Shown: positions 16,001 to 34,535, counted from the first letter of the stretch. The stretch: DNA of 64,000 nucleotides from IMGVR_UViG_3300009158_000031:124001-188000, one strand, 5' to 3'. The notes: a model not told the origin generated them from the sequence alone. Numbers and translations are program-made.

Positions 16001-17045
16001 CTTCGAAGAATTTGCAAATATTGCAAAAGAAGTTTGGGCAAGTGGAATCCTAACGCACAATGGACCTAAGGTCAAAGAACTCGAACATCGGTTAAAAGAA
16101 CAATGGCAGATACCTCATCTATCATTAGTTACAAATGGAACTATTGCACTTGAAGTTGCAATGAGAGCTCTAGAACTTCCTAAAGGAAGTGAAATTATTA
16201 CAACTCCATTTACCTGGATTGCAACTGCATCAGCTATTCAATGGCAAGATTATGAACCTATTTTTGTTGACGTTGATCCAAATACTCTTAATATAGATCC
16301 GGCTAAAATTGAAGAAAAAATAACAGATAGAACATCTGCTATTTTAGCGGTTCATGTATTCTCGAATCCATGTGATGTAGATTCTATTCAAGAAATTGCA
16401 GATCGTCGAGGTCTACGAGTTATTTATGATGGTGCTCATGCAGTTGGTGTAAAATATAAAGGAGTAGATCTTTCTCAATTCGGTGATATTACAACTCATT
16501 CATATCATGCAACTAAAATTTATAATAGTGGAGAAGGTGGATCGATTATTACTAGAAATCCAGAGTTAGCTAAAAGAATTGATCGTCTTCGCTTCTTTGG
16601 ACATAATGAAAAGAAAGATATTGTACATGAAGGAACTAATGCTAAAATGCATGAAATCTCTGCTGCAATTGGATTAGCTAATTTAAAAATGTTACCTAAA
16701 ACAATTATGCATAGAAAACTTTTAACTCTTATGTATAAACATAGAATGGAAGGTTTACCGGTTAGATATCAAGCAATCAGCAACGACTCTTATAATTTTT
16801 CATATTTCCCCATCATATTTGAAACAGAAGAACAATGTCTTAAAGTGTATGCGGCATTAGATGCTATTAAAATTATGCCTCGTAGATATTTCTATCCATC
16901 AGTTAACGAATTCAAAATCTTTGATCCTCAATCATGTCCTATTAGCGAAGATATTTCTAGACGAATTCTTTGTCTACCATGTCACGATGGTGTGAAGCTT
17001 ATGGATGTCGATGAAATCTCACACACAATAATCAAAACTTTCTAA
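15963..17045 (+). CDS. vioA: DegT/DnrJ/EryC1 PLP aminotransferase, VioA-like sugar 4-aminotransferase
   Basis: VTNGTIAL, IYDGAHA, SYHATKIYNSGEGG (catalytic Lys retained), GTNAKMHEISAAIGL, RRYFYP. Confidence 0.85.
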   Translation: MYRLLVSEPSLTNFEEFANIAKEVWASGILTHNGPKVKELEHRLKEQWQIPHLSLVTNGTIALEVAMRALELPKGSEIITTPFTWIATASAIQWQDYEPIFVDVDPNTLNIDPAKIEEKITDRTSAILAVHVFSNPCDVDSIQEIADRRGLRVIYDGAHAVGVKYKGVDLSQFGDITTHSYHATKIYNSGEGGSIITRNPELAKRIDRLRFFGHNEKKDIVHEGTNAKMHEISAAIGLANLKMLPKTIMHRKLLTLMYKHRMEGLPVRYQAISNDSYNFSYFPIIFETEEQCLKVYAALDAIKIMPRRYFYPSVNEFKIFDPQSCPISEDISRRILCLPCHDGVKLMDVDEISHTIIKTF

Positions 17046-26264: not shown

Positions 26265-29200
26265 TTGAGCGCTAGACAAGTAAATGCACAAGAAGCAATT
26301 GTTTCCATCACTAGCAAGATGGAAGCGATGCTTCAGCAAGTGCAAACCCAATATGATCAGTCAATTAATTTATTAACGTCATTAAATACAACAATGACGG
26401 TTGATGTTGGGCAGGAGCTTAAGAAGCAAACCTCCTTACTTATGTCCATTGAGGCTAAGATAGGAACCAATGGAGGTAGTGCTGGCGAAGATAAAATGTT
26501 AGGCAAGAATTTAGAAATTCTCTCTAAAGGATTGAGTAAACTTGTTAAAGCGGCTGAAAAAATTAAACCTAAAACTGGCGAACAAGTAAAAGAATTTTTA
26601 GGTAATATAGCTGATGGTCTAGCTAGTTTAACTGATAAAATAGATGAAAAGAAAGCTGAAATTATAGCGAATACGGTTATAACTTTAGCAAAAGGTGTTC
26701 TTCTATTTGGATTAGCAATGACTCTATATGTAATACTCGGACCAACCGCAATGTTAGGTTCAATGCTATTTGGATTAACAATTAGACTCTTATTGAAATC
26801 TGCCGGAGAAGTAGATGAAAATTCGCTTAAAGGAATTGTTGCAGTTGCTGCATTAGGTCTTGGTGTTATATATTTTGGATTAGCAATGGCTTTATATGCA
26901 GTTATTGGTATTCCTGCAATGCTAGGTGCTGTTTTATTTGGATTAACCGTTAGATTATTAGCTAAAACTGCCGGATTAAATGATCCTAAAGTTGCTGCTG
27001 GAATTGTCGGAATTGCTGCATTAGGTCTTGGAGCCATATATTTTGGATTAGCAATGTTGGGTTATGCAATTATCGGTATTCCAGCAATGCTAGGTGCTGT
27101 TTTATTTGGATTAACCGTTAGATTATTAGTGAAAACAGCTGGTTTAAACGATCCTAAAGTTGCTGCCGGAATGCAAGCCTTAATAGGACTTGGTAAAGCT
27201 ATTTTAATATTCGGTTTAGTTATGTTGGCTTATGCAATTATTGGTATTCCTGGATTGATTGGTGCTTTGGTTCTTGCATTAACTCTTAAACTTCTTTCGA
27301 AAAGTATTAAGTCAATGGGATCTAATATGGTCAGAAAAGGAATTATAAATATGGCTTTAGGAGCTATTGCTATTATTCTTCTCGGATTAACTATTATATT
27401 ATTTGCAAAAGAGGTTCCTATAATGAGTTCTCTTTATGTTATTCTTACCATTGGTGCATTTGCTTTAGCCTTCTATATAGTAGGTAAATTCTTTAATGAT
27501 ATATTAAAAGGAGCTCTTGCAGTTGCTGCTATAGGATTAGGTATATCATTCTTAGCCTTAGGTTTATTCTTTTATAAATCAGTTGGAATGACTTGGGAAG
27601 AAACCGCAATGTTAGGGGTTACTATCGCTGGTCTTGGATTAGTAATGGGAGGTGCTGGTGAATTCTTTATGGAAATTATTAAAGGATCCGCTGCAATGAT
27701 AGTCGCCGGAATTGCTCTAATAGTTATTTCTGCGGGTTTACTTGTATTCGCTCAAACTAAATTAACATTTCAAGATGCTGCTATTCTAGGAGCTACCATC
27801 TTAGGACTTGGTGTTGTAATGGGAATTGCCGGTGCTGGACCGGTACCTTTATTTATTGCATTAGGATCTGCCGCAATGATTGTTGCTGGTTTATCTTTAG
27901 TAGTTCTTTCTCTTGGTCTTGGAGCATTCAAGCTAACCGGATTTAAAGTTGAAGATGCTTTATCTTTAGGAGCTGCTATAGGTGCAGTTGGTGTAACTAT
28001 GGGTATTGCCGGATTAGCCTCTCCATTTATTATATTAGGTAGTGCAGCAATGGCTATTGCCGGTGTTGCATTAATGCCTCTTGCATTAGGATTGGCCGTA
28101 TTCAAAGCTATTGGTTGGAAAAAAGGAACCGATGATGAGAGTTTAAAATCTGCATTAGGTTCCGTAATATCTGGTTTTCTTGGAGGAGATATGCCTGGTG
28201 GTATTCTTGCATCAATTAAATTTGCTGCTCAAGCGGCAGCTAGATCGGTTCTTCTATTCATAGCAATTCCGCCATTAATTCTTGCCGGTGTTGCTTTATT
28301 GTCTATCTCTTTAGGATTAGCCGCATTTAAGAAAGCCGGATTTACTTCTTCGGATTCTGCTAATATGGAAGCTGCTATTGGTGGTATCGTTGGAGCATTC
28401 TCATTAGTTACTGATAAAGAACGTCAGAAGAAAATGGGAATCAATGTCGATTGGATGGATTTAATGATTGGTATTATGGCACTTTCACAAGCCGGAAATA
28501 CTCTATCTTCATTAGCAAAAGGAATTCAAGCATTTGCTAATCTTTCAGTTATTGAATATGAGGTGGTTGGTGCTGGAACTAAAAATGCTAAAATCGTTCC
28601 TAAAGGAATTACCAAATTAAGCAAGTCCGATTTTGAATCAGCGGCTTATGGAATGGCACAAGTAATTGGGGCTATTGCCGAACCATTCGCTTTAGTTGGT
28701 AAATTAGAAAAGGGTACACCATCTGGAAATCCTTTCTATGATGCAATATTCGGTGGTGGATTTGTATCTGCCGGTATTGATGCATTATCAAGATCTGGAG
28801 ATACTCTTGTTAATTTAGCAAAAGGAGTACAAGCATTCGCTAATCTCGAAATAACTGAATATGAAGTAATTGGTGCTGGAACTAAAAATGCTAAAATAAT
28901 TCCTAAATCGATTACGAAAATGTCGCCGACAGATTTTGCTGCTGCCGGAGCCAATATAGCAAAAATTATTGCGGTTGTTGCCGAAGCATTCGCTAAAGTA
29001 GGTAAAGATGAAGCTGCATCTGAAGGAGTATTCTCTGGAGGATTCTTATCTAAAGGAGTCGAAGCATTAGCTAACATAGGAGAAAATCTACAAGGAATTA
29101 CTGAATCGGTTATTAAAGTTGCAACAGGAACATTTACTCCAATGACTGCCGTTCAAGACGGAAAAGGTACTAAATTAGTACCTGGAACTCCTATTAAAAT

Positions 29201-30005
29201 TTCTAAGGCAATGTTAGAAGAGGCTGCCAGAACAATTAATAGTGTTATAATGGTTCTAGGACAGGGAATGATGGACTTCGGAACATTCGTTGACGAGAAT
29301 GAAGATTCTATCGACGAAGCTATTGAATACATTCCTACAATGAGTGAAGCCTTAATGAAGATGGTAGAGGTTAATGAAAAATTCTCTAAGATAACAGATG
29401 CAGATAAAGGAGTTAAATCATTTACTAGTTTTAATCAAGCAGTAATGGATGCTTATGATCCAGCCAAGCAGAAAAATCTTCCTCAAACAGCAGGATATAT
29501 GATGCTATTCGTTAAAGGTATTGAAAGACTTGCTGCACCGGCCGATCAATTAGGTAAGGTTGCATCTAACGTAGAACGTATAGAAGCAGCAATGAAAAAT
29601 ATCAAAACTCATGTTAATGGATTTGATATGGAAAGGCTTACTAAAACGGATTCTCTATTTAAGTCAATGGCGATTTTATCAAAGAATCCTGAAGCTATGG
29701 CTGCTAAAATTAATGATACTCTTAAAGTTGCATTTGAAGAATTTGGTAAAGCTCTTACCGAAGCAATTAAAGAATCCGGTGGTGGTGGTGGCGGTGGCGG
29801 TGGTGGAATACTTGAAGGCGTTAAAGATATTTTGACTCCAGGTCCAGCAGGTGCTGCTCCAAAAGCTACCGATCCAAAAGGAAAGGCTGCTCCTGGACCT
29901 GCTCCTCTCACTGCAGAGGCGATTGGAGCTGCTATGTCGAAAGCTTTAAATGCCGCTTCAATTACCATAAAACCGGCAGCAAACGCGGTATTCAAAACCA
30001 CCTAA
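26265..30005 (+). CDS. Tape measure protein
   Basis: 1246 aa, Gly/Ala/Leu-rich amphipathic repeats (56-aa period near 26850-27200, about 100-aa period near 28520/28820); follows the chaperone genes; TTG start uncertain. Confidence 0.8.
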   Translation: MSARQVNAQEAIVSITSKMEAMLQQVQTQYDQSINLLTSLNTTMTVDVGQELKKQTSLLMSIEAKIGTNGGSAGEDKMLGKNLEILSKGLSKLVKAAEKIKPKTGEQVKEFLGNIADGLASLTDKIDEKKAEIIANTVITLAKGVLLFGLAMTLYVILGPTAMLGSMLFGLTIRLLLKSAGEVDENSLKGIVAVAALGLGVIYFGLAMALYAVIGIPAMLGAVLFGLTVRLLAKTAGLNDPKVAAGIVGIAALGLGAIYFGLAMLGYAIIGIPAMLGAVLFGLTVRLLVKTAGLNDPKVAAGMQALIGLGKAILIFGLVMLAYAIIGIPGLIGALVLALTLKLLSKSIKSMGSNMVRKGIINMALGAIAIILLGLTIILFAKEVPIMSSLYVILTIGAFALAFYIVGKFFNDILKGALAVAAIGLGISFLALGLFFYKSVGMTWEETAMLGVTIAGLGLVMGGAGEFFMEIIKGSAAMIVAGIALIVISAGLLVFAQTKLTFQDAAILGATILGLGVVMGIAGAGPVPLFIALGSAAMIVAGLSLVVLSLGLGAFKLTGFKVEDALSLGAAIGAVGVTMGIAGLASPFIILGSAAMAIAGVALMPLALGLAVFKAIGWKKGTDDESLKSALGSVISGFLGGDMPGGILASIKFAAQAAARSVLLFIAIPPLILAGVALLSISLGLAAFKKAGFTSSDSANMEAAIGGIVGAFSLVTDKERQKKMGINVDWMDLMIGIMALSQAGNTLSSLAKGIQAFANLSVIEYEVVGAGTKNAKIVPKGITKLSKSDFESAAYGMAQVIGAIAEPFALVGKLEKGTPSGNPFYDAIFGGGFVSAGIDALSRSGDTLVNLAKGVQAFANLEITEYEVIGAGTKNAKIIPKSITKMSPTDFAAAGANIAKIIAVVAEAFAKVGKDEAASEGVFSGGFLSKGVEALANIGENLQGITESVIKVATGTFTPMTAVQDGKGTKLVPGTPIKISKAMLEEAARTINSVIMVLGQGMMDFGTFVDENEDSIDEAIEYIPTMSEALMKMVEVNEKFSKITDADKGVKSFTSFNQAVMDAYDPAKQKNLPQTAGYMMLFVKGIERLAAPADQLGKVASNVERIEAAMKNIKTHVNGFDMERLTKTDSLFKSMAILSKNPEAMAAKINDTLKVAFEEFGKALTEAIKESGGGGGGGGGGILEGVKDILTPGPAGAAPKATDPKGKAAPGPAPLTAEAIGAAMSKALNAASITIKPAANAVFKTT

Positions 30006-30023: not shown

Positions 30024-30770
30024 ATGGCTAAAAGAAGAAAGAATTATCAAGAGGAAGAACAAGATTACCAAGAGGTAATCAATCATTTCCAACCAAATCA
30101 ACCCATTCTTGAAAAATACAAAATTGAGTTAAAACCTAAAAGCGAAAATCAAAAGATTTTTTTAGACTTAATAAGTAATAAGGAAATTGTAATATGTTCG
30201 GGTCCAGCTGGTACAGGTAAAACTTTCTTAGCTTGCGTTCAAGCACTTAAATTATTCAAATCCGAATTTAAGTATCGTAAAATCGTATTAGTAAAATCCG
30301 TTACAACTCTTAAGGATGAAGAGATTGGTTATCTTAAAGGAACTATGGAAGAAAAAATGGAACCTTTCGTTTATTCATTCTTTCACAACTTCGAGAAAAT
30401 CCTTCCCAAGAATGTTATTAAAAATTTAAAAGACTCTCAATCAATTGAAGTTCTTCCTCTTGCATATATGCGAGGAATTAATCTAGATAATTGTATTGTA
30501 ATTGTCGATGAATGTCAAAATATTACACCTGATAATATGAGAACTATTATGACTCGTATAGGTGAAAATTGTAAGATGATATTCTTAGGTGATGAAGGTC
30601 AAATCGATTTGAAAAATAAGAAAAACTCTTCTTTACAGCTAATCATGGATAAATTCTCAACGGTTCCAGCAATTGGATGTATTAGATTCACCGAAGAAGA
30701 TACGGTTAGAAATCCATTAATCAGAAAAATAGAAGAAGTTTTTAGATCTATTTCTAATCCTACTGCATAA
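30024..30770 (+). CDS. phoH: PhoH-family ATPase
   Basis: GPAGTGKT, IGYLKGTMEEKMEP, PLAYMRG, IVDECQN, LGDEGQID, VRNPLI. Confidence 0.95.
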   Translation: MAKRRKNYQEEEQDYQEVINHFQPNQPILEKYKIELKPKSENQKIFLDLISNKEIVICSGPAGTGKTFLACVQALKLFKSEFKYRKIVLVKSVTTLKDEEIGYLKGTMEEKMEPFVYSFFHNFEKILPKNVIKNLKDSQSIEVLPLAYMRGINLDNCIVIVDECQNITPDNMRTIMTRIGENCKMIFLGDEGQIDLKNKKNSSLQLIMDKFSTVPAIGCIRFTEEDTVRNPLIRKIEEVFRSISNPTA

Positions 30771-30777
30771 AATAGGT

Positions 30778-31299
30778 ATGAAAAGAAAAAAGCCAAATGT
30801 CTTCTTAATATCCGATACTTTCTTTGGTAGAAATTTAGCTGCCGTTGAAAGAGGATTTGAGAGTGTAGAAGAGATGGAAGATAACATGATTGATTTATGG
30901 AATGAAACCGTCGGTGAAGATGATGTAGTATATCATTTAGGTAATTTTGCATGGGATCCTATTTCAGCAGAAACGGCAATCAATTTTCTGAAAGGTAAAA
31001 TTTATTTCGTATCCGGTAAATGTGATACCTTTCTACCGACCATATCTTTAGTTAAAACTGGAGTTCATACTTTATTTACCAATCAGATTGGAACTATGAA
31101 AGATCACAATTTTATATTTTCTCATTGGCCTATGTTAGATTGGCCTGGAAAAGAAAATGGATTTATGCAATTTCATGCCGGAGAAGAACCAACAAATATT
31201 AAAGAACAACGAATCAATGTCAATTGTAAGAATTGGGGTTTAAAACCAGTTGCCCTAGATGCTATACTTGATATTATTGAAATAACAAATAAAAAATAA
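30778..31299 (+). CDS. Calcineurin-like phosphoesterase homologue with degenerate metal ligands
   Basis: FLISDTFFG, YHLGNF, VSGKCD, FSHWP, FHAG replace canonical SDxH, HLGD, GNHD, SHYP and HGH. Confidence 0.7.
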   Translation: MKRKKPNVFLISDTFFGRNLAAVERGFESVEEMEDNMIDLWNETVGEDDVVYHLGNFAWDPISAETAINFLKGKIYFVSGKCDTFLPTISLVKTGVHTLFTNQIGTMKDHNFIFSHWPMLDWPGKENGFMQFHAGEEPTNIKEQRINVNCKNWGLKPVALDAILDIIEITNKK

Positions 31300-31377
31300 A
31301 CATAGAGCCTCACTCTTGTTTGTCTTGGGTTTAATCACCCTAGAGTAGTCTAATCGGCTACAATAAGATTAACAAAC
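31298..31377 (+). ncRNA. Candidate structured 5' leader: left arm of a long-range inverted repeat plus a three-way junction with two UAAUC loops
   Basis: P1 ttgtttgtctt/aagattaacaa; P2 gggt-ttaatc-accc; P3 gtagtc-taatc-ggctac. Confidence 0.45.
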
Positions 31378-31394
31378 TAAAAACAAAGGTAAAA

Positions 31395-32171
31395 ATGTAC
31401 ACAACAACCACAACAGAAAAAGCTTGCGAAGCTCATATCGCTATTAATCACAGCCGTCTAAAGAGCTATGATAAAAATCGCTACTATCTTAAAGATAAAA
31501 CAAATTTCGAGATAGAGGTATTCAATCCACATACCGTTTCGGTATTAGCAAAAATCAAAATGAATGGTGAGTATATCTCAACTGCCGGATTGATTATTAA
31601 ACCAGGTCAACGAGTATTTCTTTCTCGTTATCTAGACACAAACAATTCCTTCCTTTTCGAAACATATGATGTTGAGAATAATCATGAAGTACTTGAAGCA
31701 ATTGCCAACAATGGTAAAATTGAAGTTGAATTCTTCTTAGAACAGAATTATTATAATCCTACTTTTAGTGGAATATCGTGGACTTCATCGCCAACGGTTT
31801 ATTATCAAAACAACTTCCATAATGGAAATATGTTGTTCGATTCACAACCCATCTTTGGAGGAATTGCCTCTACCTTCACATCATCTCTTAATATGCCTAT
31901 TGCCGGTAGTTCAGATGTAAAATCTCTTTCGGTAGATGCATCAATAGAAACGGGAAGAATTGAGAAAGGTGAAAAGACTAATCAAAAAATGGAATCATCT
32001 TATGGATCTTATAATTCATGGCCAACGAACGCCATTCAAATTCAGCTATTCCCGGAATCAATCAAACCAATTGAGGTTTCTGAAATTCGTACATATTGTA
32101 CTGAATGTGGAACTCGAATGAAAAAACAAACATGGAAATTCTGCCCTAATTGCGGAACTAAAAATGACTAA
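31395..32171 (+). CDS. Conserved phage protein with C-terminal double zinc ribbon
   Basis: Beta-rich N-domain (FEIEVFNP..KIKMNG..KPGQRVFL); C-terminal YCTECG..KFCPNCG. Confidence 0.7.
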   Translation: MYTTTTTEKACEAHIAINHSRLKSYDKNRYYLKDKTNFEIEVFNPHTVSVLAKIKMNGEYISTAGLIIKPGQRVFLSRYLDTNNSFLFETYDVENNHEVLEAIANNGKIEVEFFLEQNYYNPTFSGISWTSSPTVYYQNNFHNGNMLFDSQPIFGGIASTFTSSLNMPIAGSSDVKSLSVDASIETGRIEKGEKTNQKMESSYGSYNSWPTNAIQIQLFPESIKPIEVSEIRTYCTECGTRMKKQTWKFCPNCGTKND

Positions 32172-32199
32172 TTAGAGAGTGAGGCCTCTATGTTTTAAT

Positions 32200-32256
32200 T
32201 TGTTAATAACTTTATTCAAATAAATTTTTTTATTCCACAAAAAAGTATTATATTTG
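32200..32256 (+). promoter_or_regulatory. Composite early promoter, copy 4
   Basis: TTGTTAATAACTT at 32200; TATATTTG at 32249. Confidence 0.8.
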
Positions 32257-32282
32257 TATATACAATTTAAAACAATATACAT

Positions 32283-33935: not shown

Positions 33936-34535
33936 ATGGCTAAAAACGAATCATTAAAGGAATTAGGCGTTTCATTTAAAGAAACCAGATCAGAACGAGT
34001 ATTTACCGATTTGTATCATCGACTTAAACCAGGATTAACAAATTATGTCTTTCAAATTGTAAAAGATTACGATATGTCTAATCATATTGTTTCGGCGGTA
34101 ATGTCTGAGGTTTACAATAAAATCGATAAATATGATCCCAAATGGCATATATCAACGTGGATTTATCGAATAGCATACACTCATGCTTGTGGTTATCTTC
34201 GTGCTAAAAAAGTACAAAGAACGGTTTCCCTTTCTGCATTCGATAACGATGAAAATCGTAACCGTTTACATAAACTTGAATTTGAATCTATCGAAGATCA
34301 TCGTGATGCAATCGAAAAACGTGAGGATGCTGATGCGGAAAAAGCACACATTTTATACCTTCGTACAATCGTCGATAATTTACCAATCGAATATCGTGAG
34401 GTAGTAGTTGAAAAATTCTATAACGATTTAAAATACGATGAAATCGCCGAGAAACTAAATATTCCATTACATACCGTAAAAAATCGAATTTCTCGAGGAA
34501 AACGAATCATTCAAGAAGAACTTACCAAAAAATAA
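33936..34535 (+). CDS. ECF-type RNA polymerase sigma-70 factor
   Basis: Region 2 (VYNKIDKYDPKWHISTWIYRIAYT); region 4 HTH (LPIEYREVVVEKFYNDLKYDEIAEKLNIPLHTVKNRISRGK). Confidence 0.92.
   Translation: MAKNESLKELGVSFKETRSERVFTDLYHRLKPGLTNYVFQIVKDYDMSNHIVSAVMSEVYNKIDKYDPKWHISTWIYRIAYTHACGYLRAKKVQRTVSLSAFDNDENRNRLHKLEFESIEDHRDAIEKREDADAEKAHILYLRTIVDNLPIEYREVVVEKFYNDLKYDEIAEKLNIPLHTVKNRISRGKRIIQEELTKK

What the first reader, a model, noticed from the sequence alone, without database searches (positions are those of the whole stretch)
31298..32195. Gene enclosed by a long-range inverted repeat, with a twin-UAAUC-loop structured leader
Seen: 31298-31316 pairs with 32176-32195 (19 pairs, one bulge). 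The arms hug the upstream stop codon and this gene's own stop, bracketing the zinc-ribbon gene exactly. Within the 5' UTR a three-way junction can form whose two hairpins both have TAATC loops (gggt-ttaatc-accc; gtagtc-taatc-ggctac), closed by ttgtttgtctt/aagattaacaa next to the translation start region. Inference: the mRNA ends pair, allowing RNase III excision, circularisation or stabilisation, and the repeated loops look like binding sites for a dimeric protein, perhaps the encoded protein itself. It could alternatively be an invertible or mobile cassette.
Basis: partly seen in the sequence, partly recalled or inferred. Interest (0 to 1): 0.62.

Follow-up and report, generated by a model that had tools for sequence, protein, structure and literature searches.

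The report
Phage mRNA clamped end-to-end, structured leader
A gene for an uncharacterised zinc-ribbon protein in a large freshwater phage carries a conserved, previously uncatalogued three-way-junction RNA in its leader, and in most relatives its 5' and 3' flanks base-pair across the whole coding region, which points to control at the mRNA level and not to a mobile or invertible DNA cassette.

Summary
Bases 31298-31316 pair with 32176-32195 (19 pairs, one bulged G). This is the best flank pairing of 68 ORFs in the window and beats 1500 random window pairs.

It is conserved by covariation. In 59 of 99 distinct homologous loci, a 5' arm ends 72-88 nt before the ATG and pairs with a 3' arm starting 2-11 nt after the stop. 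About a dozen unrelated arm sequences do this. There are G-C/G.U/A-U series, co-deletions and moving bulges, which fits pairing in the sense RNA.

The leader three-way junction is also real. In 63 distinct sequences, 16 of 18 pairs show compensatory changes, and junction bases U-N-G-A and R-A-N are near invariant. It is absent from Rfam and occurs once per phage genome, always before this gene.

The twin UAAUC loops are not conserved, so the idea of a dimer binding the loops fails. I found no inversion or circular junction, no transposase or recombinase, and only one copy per genome.

My best reading is a cis-acting mRNA element. An ORF-spanning clamp would protect or insulate the transcript, as in B. 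subtilis hbs. The junction would be a specific binding site, possibly for the encoded protein. The structure is well supported; the function is inferred.

The parts
31298..31316 (+). 5' arm of the ORF-spanning helix (P0). Alone it can also fold as a local 5' hairpin, AAACA-U-AGAG[CCUCA]CUCU-UGUUU.
   Evidence: Local hairpin -7.8 kcal/mol, z -3.4. Covariation with the 3' arm in the own-clade relatives L149, L151 and L153.
31318..31373 (+). Conserved three-way junction of the leader. P1 is 31318-31326 with 31365-31373. P2 is 31327-31330 with 31337-31340. Junction J23 (UAGA) is 31341-31344. P3 is 31345-31350 with 31356-31361. Junction J31 (AAU) is 31362-31364.
   Evidence: Alignment A2 and RNAalifold. 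Pair counts with controls. Covariance model R1 scores 63.9 bits at 31316-31375.
31386..31390 (+). Shine-Dalgarno-like AAGGU, unpaired in the junction model, 5-9 nt before the start codon.
   Evidence: Read from the sequence. Left single-stranded in the folds. That it acts as a ribosome-binding site is inferred.
31395..32171 (+). Gene for a 258-aa protein. It has an N-terminal Ig-like/MSP-like beta-sandwich, a variable disordered linker and an almost invariant C-terminal zinc ribbon (CGTRMKKQTWKFCPNCG).
32176..32195 (+). 3' arm of P0, starting 4 nt after the stop codon, with one bulged G.
32193..32207 (+). Segment just after the 3' arm that is complementary to the 3' strand of P1 (31368-31382; 15 nt, 93%). 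It is kept in the window's clade only, so its status is uncertain.
   Evidence: I10. Present in L004, L149 and L151 but not L153. No such second pairing across the family.

Best explanation
This is an RNA-level, cis-acting element of one phage gene, with two parts.

(1) A roughly 56-nt three-way junction lies in the 5' leader. It has helices P1, P2 and P3 and near-invariant junction bases U-N-G-A and R-A-N. It is present before every homologue examined.

(2) A 5' element abuts P1. In most lineages it is complementary to a segment placed 2-11 nt after the stop codon, so the finished mRNA closes into a panhandle (P0) with the ORF as its loop. In lineages without the 3' partner, the same position holds a local 5' hairpin and the gene ends in an ordinary terminator hairpin.

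Most likely mechanism (inferred): the 5' stem, local or long-range, shields the mRNA's 5' end. The long-range version also ties down the 3' untranslated end. This gives a compact transcript that resists ribonucleases and is insulated from its context, whether it starts at its own promoter, follows a tRNA, or is read through from an upstream gene. The start region stays single-stranded, so translation can proceed inside the clamp. The invariant junction is most likely a specific binding site for a protein. The candidate is the gene's own basic zinc-ribbon protein, which would give autogenous control.

Shown: the structures, their conservation and their link to this one gene. Inferred: the effect on stability and the identity of the ligand.

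The confidence given (0.45) is for this functional reading. That the structures are real, selected RNA features I hold at about 0.9.
For: P0 is far above chance in the window and forms in the full-length fold.

Across 99 distinct flank pairs, the duplex energy between a gene's own two flanks has a median of -26 kcal/mol. Against the downstream flank of an unrelated locus it is -18 (Mann-Whitney p 8.6e-26).

Fifty-nine loci have arms at a fixed geometry, built from about a dozen unalignable sequences.

Changes in the window's own clade: a double change A-U to G-C (L149), a co-deletion in both arms (L153) and loss of the bulge (L151).

Two G-C / G.U / A-U series exist: L011/L018/L111 and L055/L119/L045. 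In the core columns of the GGUGCC arm group there are 22 G.U against 4 A.C.

Three-way junction: 97.6% of cells are paired, against 69% in shuffles and 39-52% when partners are slid. Sixteen of 18 pairs carry changes on both sides, and many G.U pairs make sense only on the + strand.

Model R1 finds the junction before homologues that were not in the seed, including ones only 33-39% identical in protein. It hits once per genome in six large phage records.

The 5' arm starts 1-2 nt after a tRNA-Ser 3' end in one clade. In others it lies 2-10 nt after a TATATAAT-like box. Both fit an arm at the extreme 5' end of the RNA.

Contigs from three lake metatranscriptome libraries cover the leader and ORF of a roughly 95% identical relative.

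Precedent: a 14-bp 5'/3'-UTR interaction modulates RNase Y cleavage of B. subtilis hbs mRNA (PMC5737220).
Against: There are no transcript ends, half-lives or binding data, and the RNA-library contigs could derive from contaminating DNA.

A local hairpin would be enough to protect a 5' end, so the advantage of long-range pairing is unexplained.

About half of the loci have a separate terminator hairpin after the 3' arm, so protecting the 3' end cannot be the general role.

About 40% of loci, including the large clade B, lack P0 altogether.

The strict G.U versus A.C count over all arm families is underpowered (4 vs 2).

Autoregulation by the encoded protein is conjecture. The fold search gives only generic Ig-like sandwiches.
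Confidence: 0.45

Rival explanations
1. P0 is an RNase III processing stem. The paired flanks would be cut to release a discrete monocistronic mRNA, as with the stems that flank rRNAs or the T7 early-gene sites.
For: The window's helix has 19 pairs plus a bulge, and some clades reach 22-27 pairs. The gene sits in polycistronic or tRNA-linked contexts where excision would be useful.
Against: Across arm families the median is 14 and the minimum is 9 Watson-Crick pairs, which is short for RNase III (own knowledge). No discrete ends were seen, but only contigs were available. Clade B does without the stem.
Confidence: 0.17
2. P0 is one state of a conformational switch. The 5' arm first folds locally, or pairs with the translation start region. 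It is captured by the 3' arm only once the whole gene has been transcribed. This would couple translation to transcript completeness, or bring terminating ribosomes next to the start site.
For: The 5' arm folds on its own better than shuffles (mean z -1.4). In the window the local hairpin and outer P1 compete for UGUUUG. In some clades the arm is complementary to the SD or to the bases just 5' of the AUG, for example GUGGUGC with GCACUAU. The stop codon is always 2-11 nt from the 3' arm.
Against: Arm-to-start-region pairing is barely above controls: -7.05 against -5.85 and -6.59 kcal/mol. In the window it is only 4-8 weak pairs. No covariation supports it. The junction core forms in either state.
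Confidence: 0.15
3. P0 followed by a U-rich tail acts as a split intrinsic terminator. Its upstream half would be the 5' end of the same transcript.
For: In the window, L024/L069, L095, L022 and L045 the 3' arm runs into or is followed by a U tract, and no other terminator hairpin is present.
Against: There is no overall enrichment of T after the 3' arm (2.67 vs 2.80 per 8 nt). Many loci have an ordinary terminator after the arm. A hairpin with an 860-nt loop is kinetically unfavourable (own knowledge).
Confidence: 0.06
4. The repeat acts at the DNA level, as ends of an invertible segment or of a small mobile cassette.
For: The inverted repeats bracket exactly one gene. Homology between relatives breaks at the outer edge of the 5' arm (window vs L004; L014 vs L015, where an HNH gene is inserted). 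DNA contigs of other phages diverge at 32194.
Against: The locus is single copy. There is no transposase or recombinase domain in the gene or its neighbours. The orientation is the same in all assemblies and no joints were found. The arms carry bulges, G.U pairs and free sequence turnover while keeping a geometry tied to start and stop codons. No target-site duplication is visible.
Confidence: 0.03

Closest known systems
5'/3'-UTR interaction of Bacillus subtilis hbs mRNA (PMC5737220)
   Same: A roughly 14-bp pairing between the two untranslated ends of one short, highly structured mRNA. It is compatible with translation and affects ribonuclease access.
   Different: The hbs case is a single bacterial gene with experimental proof. 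Here the pairing is seen by covariation across many phage lineages, sits next to a conserved three-way junction, and its effect is untested.
icaR mRNA 5'/3'-UTR pairing in Staphylococcus aureus (PMC3868564)
   Same: The 3' UTR pairs with the 5' UTR of the same mRNA.
   Different: In icaR the pairing covers the Shine-Dalgarno region, blocks translation and invites RNase III. Here the start region is left unpaired.
Long-distance 5'-3' pairing in type I toxin mRNAs (hok fbi/tac, aapA1) (own knowledge; reviewed in PMC9841398)
   Same: An ORF-spanning helix closes the full-length transcript, and metastable local 5' hairpins form first.
   Different: Those are roughly 400-nt mRNAs for small toxic peptides, with an antisense RNA and activation by 3' trimming. 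None of these features is seen here.
RNase III processing stems flanking rRNAs and phage T7 early genes (own knowledge)
   Same: Complementary flanks bracket a functional RNA unit inside a longer transcript.
   Different: The helices here are usually shorter, a protein-coding ORF is enclosed, and no cleavage evidence exists.
Autoregulatory leaders that bind their own product, such as T4 gene 32 and the three-way-junction rpsO (S15) leader of Geobacillus (own knowledge)
   Same: A gene-specific, single-copy structured leader with invariant unpaired bases, placed before a gene for a basic protein likely to bind nucleic acid.
   Different: No sequence or Rfam relationship, and binding has not been tested.

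Membership tests
Any Rfam 15 family | Score at or above the family's gathering threshold | tested here: not met
   No hit in the whole window at gathering thresholds. In 31250-32260, only chance-level hits (E 1.8-7.5) inside the ORF and none on the leader or arms.
Bacterial 5'/3'-UTR interacting mRNAs (hbs, icaR type) | Complementary segments in the 5' and 3' untranslated regions of the same gene | tested here: met
   Conserved with covariation.
Bacterial 5'/3'-UTR interacting mRNAs (hbs, icaR type) | Both segments lie on one transcript in vivo | tested here: inconclusive
   RNA-library contigs of a close relative cover 31233-31762 and 32034-32233 as separate pieces. No piece spans both arms, and contaminating DNA is not excluded.
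Bacterial 5'/3'-UTR interacting mRNAs (hbs, icaR type) | The pairing changes RNase cleavage, stability or translation | not testable with these tools
   Needs mutational and half-life experiments.
RNase III processing stem | A near-continuous duplex of about two helical turns (about 20 bp) | tested here: inconclusive
   The window has 19 bp plus one bulge. The family has a median of 14 and a range of 9-27 Watson-Crick pairs.
Invertible DNA segment | Both orientations present in sequence data | tested here: not met
   Same orientation in the window, L002 and L003. No joints in one DNA and three RNA contig sets. Contigs can miss rare variants.
Invertible DNA segment | Site-specific recombinase encoded nearby | tested here: not met
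   Neighbours are PhoH, a phosphoesterase, small ORFs without hits and a sigma factor. No recombinase domain was found.
Insertion sequence / MITE with terminal inverted repeats | Transposase, multiple copies, target-site duplication | tested here: not met
   No transposase domain. Arms and gene are single copy in the 254-kb record. No direct repeat flanks the arms.
Hammerhead ribozyme (three-way junction) | Core CUGANGA and GAAA with an unpaired cleavage-site base between stems III and I | tested here: not met
   The junctions are U-N-G-A (4 nt), R-A-N (3 nt) and 0 nt. No Rfam hammerhead hit.
k-junction / tandem sheared G.A motif | G.A and A.G pairs extending one helix at a three-way junction, with a sharp kink | not testable with these tools
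   The invariant G and A of J23 face the R-A of J31 on either side of P3. This is compatible on paper only.

The most novel reading that the evidence does not exclude
The ORF-spanning helix is a functional switch and not a passive clamp. The 5' element first folds locally, or onto the start region, and is captured by the 3' arm only when the gene has been fully transcribed. The closed form then places the stop codon within a few nucleotides of the leader junction. Expression would therefore depend on transcript completeness, or terminating ribosomes would be handed back to the same start site. The invariant three-way junction would be the docking site for the gene's own zinc-ribbon protein. 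That would be a closed-loop, self-governing mRNA in a bacterial virus.
Probability: 0.15. Interest if true: 0.85.

Novelty: new variant of a known kind. Interest (0 to 1): 0.64.

Why it matters
Pairing between the two ends of a bacterial or phage mRNA is known from a handful of single-gene experiments. Here the same architecture is backed by repeated independent compensatory evolution across a very large family of uncultured phages: 2433 protein clusters at 50% identity.

It comes with a well-defined RNA motif that is not in Rfam and is tied to one gene of unknown function. This gives a ready comparative data set for asking why an mRNA would clamp its ends. It also offers a compact candidate module for mRNA insulation or stabilisation, and a handle on the function of a widespread phage protein.

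Tried and rejected
- **Twin UAAUC loops as a conserved pair:** rejected. The P3 loop varies even within the clade, and a roughly 95% identical relative has 31335 T>C in the P2 loop.
- **A second long-range pairing** between the leader's 3' part and the region after the 3' arm: present in the window's clade (I10), but not above control across the family (17.6 vs 18.0).
- **5' arm pairing with the translation start region:** only marginally above controls.
- **U-tract after the 3' arm as a general feature:** not enriched.
- **Strict G.U versus A.C mismatch count over all arm families:** too few events to decide. A looser count gave 34 vs 20 (p 0.04) but includes AT-rich noise.
- **Clustering arm sequences by shared 7-mers:** chained most families together and gave no useful count. 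The figure of about a dozen families comes from reading the list.
- **Protein function:** Pfam and PHROGs give only the zinc ribbon. Foldseek against the PDB is not significant. VIA-align gives generic Ig/MSP/PapD-like sandwiches at Z 6-7. ESM Atlas neighbours are phage hypothetical proteins.
- **Similar cultured phages:** none in the INPHARED collection. The genome collection holds only four MAG contigs.
- **Second, weak R1 hit** at 16152-16201: it lies inside a 360-aa coding sequence and is taken as chance.
- **Literature searches:** no description of this motif found.

Full report
**Setting.** The window is bases 124001-188000 of a 254-kb IMG/VR virus record. It is AT-rich, comes from freshwater, and has no close cultured relative. 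Around the finding lie:
- a 1246-aa protein rich in membrane-like repeats (26265-30005),
- PhoH (30024-30770),
- a phosphoesterase (30778-31299),
- the gene in question (31395-32171),
- several small ORFs without family hits,
- a sigma-70-type factor at 33936-34535.

**The observation.** Bases 31298-31316 and 32176-32195 are complementary over 19 pairs, with one bulged G in the 3' arm. Each arm is unique in the window.
- The 5' arm overlaps the upstream TAA. The 3' arm begins 4 nt after the gene's own TAA.
- I scored complementarity between the region 140-41 nt upstream of the start and the 60 nt at the stop. This gene scored 41. The next best of 68 ORFs scored 29, and 1500 random window pairs at the same spacing reached at most 36.
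- A fold of the 905-nt transcript model closes the molecule with this helix in both the MFE and the centroid structure. The whole RNA is more stable than its shuffles (z -4.3).

**Homologues.** The protein belongs to a very large family with no annotation. It has 2433 clusters at 50% identity with E up to 1e-3, and 1080 below 1e-30. Members are almost all labelled hypothetical and assigned to tailed phages. I collected loci from viral contigs, metagenome contigs, MAG contigs and four look-ups of closer relatives. After removing duplicates, 99 distinct pairs of flanks remained.

**The long-range helix is conserved by covariation.**
- *Fixed geometry.* In 59 of the 99 loci, a 5' segment ending 72-88 nt before the ATG is complementary to a segment starting 2-11 nt after the stop.
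- *Different sequences.* Examples are AAACATAGAGCCTCACTCT, GTATTGAAAGGTGCCTTTCGTAC, AAGTGGTGCCTAAC, ACCCTTCTCTCTTT, AATTAAGCGGTGCCTTTTACC, ATTAGTATAGCGCCAATAACTTTGTTAG, AAGAAATTAAACCTCAAC, CCTTTTCCCGTT and others. By eye this makes about a dozen unalignable families.
- *Above control.* Predicted duplex energies between a gene's own two flanks have a median of -26 kcal/mol. Against the downstream flank of an unrelated locus the median is -18 (p 8.6e-26).
- *Changes in the window's own clade*. L149 (79% protein identity) changes an A-U pair to G-C on both sides. L153 has lost the same two bases from both arms. L151 lacks the bulged G and carries a bulge elsewhere.
- *Wobble intermediates.* Two series run G-C, G.U, A-U at one position: L011/L018/L111 and L055/L119/L045. 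In the core columns of the GGUGCC arm group there are 22 G.U against 4 A.C. A G.U on the + strand would be a C.A mismatch on the other strand and in DNA, so this points to pairing in the sense RNA. A strict count over all families is too small to decide.

**Lineages without the helix.** Clade B (L005-L010 and many metagenome loci) and the L081/L092/L106 group show no long-range complementarity above control.
- At the position of the 5' arm they carry a local hairpin, CTAGAGGTTTCTAG or TAGAG-loop-CTCTA, directly abutting P1. The gene ends in a normal terminator hairpin.
- The window's 5' arm still contains the same AGAG-loop-CTCT hairpin (z -3.4). Across clades the 5' arm folds on its own better than shuffles (mean z -1.4).
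- So the common denominator is a 5' stem next to the junction. In most lineages a 3' partner can take over that stem completely.

**The leader three-way junction.** Every leader folds into P1 enclosing two hairpins.
- In an alignment of 63 distinct sequences (A2), RNAalifold predicts 18 pairs, and 16 have changes on both sides.
- 97.6% of cells are standard pairs, against 69% after shuffling partners and 39-52% when partners are slid by 1-3 columns.
- The junction bases are nearly fixed: U-N-G-A between P2 and P3, R-A-N between P3 and P1, and nothing between P1 and P2.
- The seed sequences had been chosen with a fold-based parser. As a check, covariance model R1 was run on loci that the parser had missed or that were fetched later. 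It found the motif, on the right strand just upstream of the gene, in nearly all of them, including proteins only 33-39% identical.
- R1 hits once per genome in the window's record and in five other 139-319-kb phage records. The only other hit (20.9 bits) lies inside a coding sequence.
- Rfam has nothing like it.

**What is not conserved.** The P2 loop keeps UAAUC within the window's clade. The P3 loop reads UAUCC, UUUAAUAA or UUAAC there, and both loops differ freely elsewhere. A roughly 95% identical relative seen in RNA libraries has 31335 T>C in the P2 loop.

**Context.**
- In the GGUGCC clade the 5' arm starts 1-2 nt after a tRNA-Ser(UGA) gene. In some members it follows an HNH endonuclease gene inserted between the tRNA and the arm.
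- In several other clades a TATATAAT-like box lies 2-10 nt upstream of the arm or hairpin.
- In the window and L004 the arm follows an upstream coding gene.
- Homology between relatives in different contexts starts at the outer edge of the 5' arm. The unit from arm to arm therefore behaves as one module in phage mosaicism.
- This does not make it a mobile element. It is single copy and has no transposase, recombinase or target duplication. All assemblies show the same orientation, and no joints were seen.

**Expression.** Contigs from three independent lake metatranscriptome libraries, 90-99% identical to the window, cover 31233-31762, 31292-31535, 31642-31808 and 32034-32233. This is compatible with transcription through the leader, ORF and 3' arm. 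Contigs cannot show ends or strand, and DNA carry-over is not excluded.

**The protein.** The AlphaFold2 model has a beta-sandwich (residues 10-118 plus strands 184-220), a disordered variable linker and a zinc ribbon. Structural neighbours are generic Ig-like, MSP or PapD-like domains at Z about 7. The zinc ribbon and the basic stretch between its knuckles are invariant across the family. This fits a fixed nucleic-acid or host partner, but no more can be said.

**Mechanism.**
- *Shown.* There is a gene-specific structured leader. In most lineages there is also an ORF-spanning helix in the sense RNA. Both are under selection.
- *Inferred.* The 5' stem protects the 5' end. This end would be monophosphorylated where the RNA is released from a tRNA precursor. 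The long-range form clamps both ends into a compact unit that is independent of its context, much as the 14-bp 5'/3' pairing of hbs mRNA limits RNase Y access (PMC5737220). The start region stays open, unlike in icaR (PMC3868564). The invariant junction is probably a protein-binding site, perhaps for the encoded protein.
- *Rivals.* RNase III excision is weakened by the short arms in many clades. A co-transcriptional switch involving the start region has only marginal support. A split terminator shows no general U-tract. A DNA-level role is largely excluded.

**Novelty.** End-to-end mRNA pairing and autoregulatory leaders are both known kinds. What is new is this motif, its tie to a huge uncharacterised phage family, and the amount of independent covariation behind an ORF-spanning helix. 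I rate it a new variant of a known kind and of good interest. The function remains open.

Noticed in passing
window 32193-32280: The intergenic stretch right after the 3' arm has several-fold higher DNA contig depth than its surroundings. Contigs of other phages join it with different upstream sequence, with loose ends at 32194 and 32222. This looks like a shared promoter-like or mosaic-junction sequence.
   Followed up: partly
L011 2798-2884, L014, L018, L042, L046, L055, L061, L111, L119, L125, L136: In one large clade the gene always follows a tRNA-Ser(UGA) gene. In L015 and L045 an HNH endonuclease gene is inserted exactly between the tRNA and the 5' arm.
   Followed up: partly
window 32097-32165 (protein residues 235-257): The zinc ribbon and the basic stretch between its knuckles (CGTRMKKQTWKFCPNCG) are invariant in proteins that are otherwise only about 40% identical. 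The middle third of the protein is hypervariable and predicted to be disordered.
   Followed up: partly
window 26265-30005: A 1246-aa ORF with many repeated hydrophobic segments and a run of ten glycines. It has no Pfam hit. It may be a tape-measure-like or membrane-associated virion protein.
   Followed up: no
window 33936-34535: The phage encodes a sigma-70-family factor (regions 2 and 4; PF08281 E 6e-15). This may relate to the TATATAAT-like boxes seen upstream of the element in relatives.
   Followed up: no
window 31368-31382 and 32193-32207: A second 15-nt complementarity (93%) links the 3' strand of P1 with the sequence just after the 3' arm. It is kept in L004, L149 and L151 but not in L153 or other clades.
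   Followed up: yes
L146 (425-kb contig filed as a Pacearchaeota MAG), L147 (filed as Gracilibacteria), L145 (filed as Cytophagaceae): Contigs carrying this phage gene and its leader motif are filed under cellular MAGs. They are probably phage contigs that were binned by mistake.
   Followed up: no
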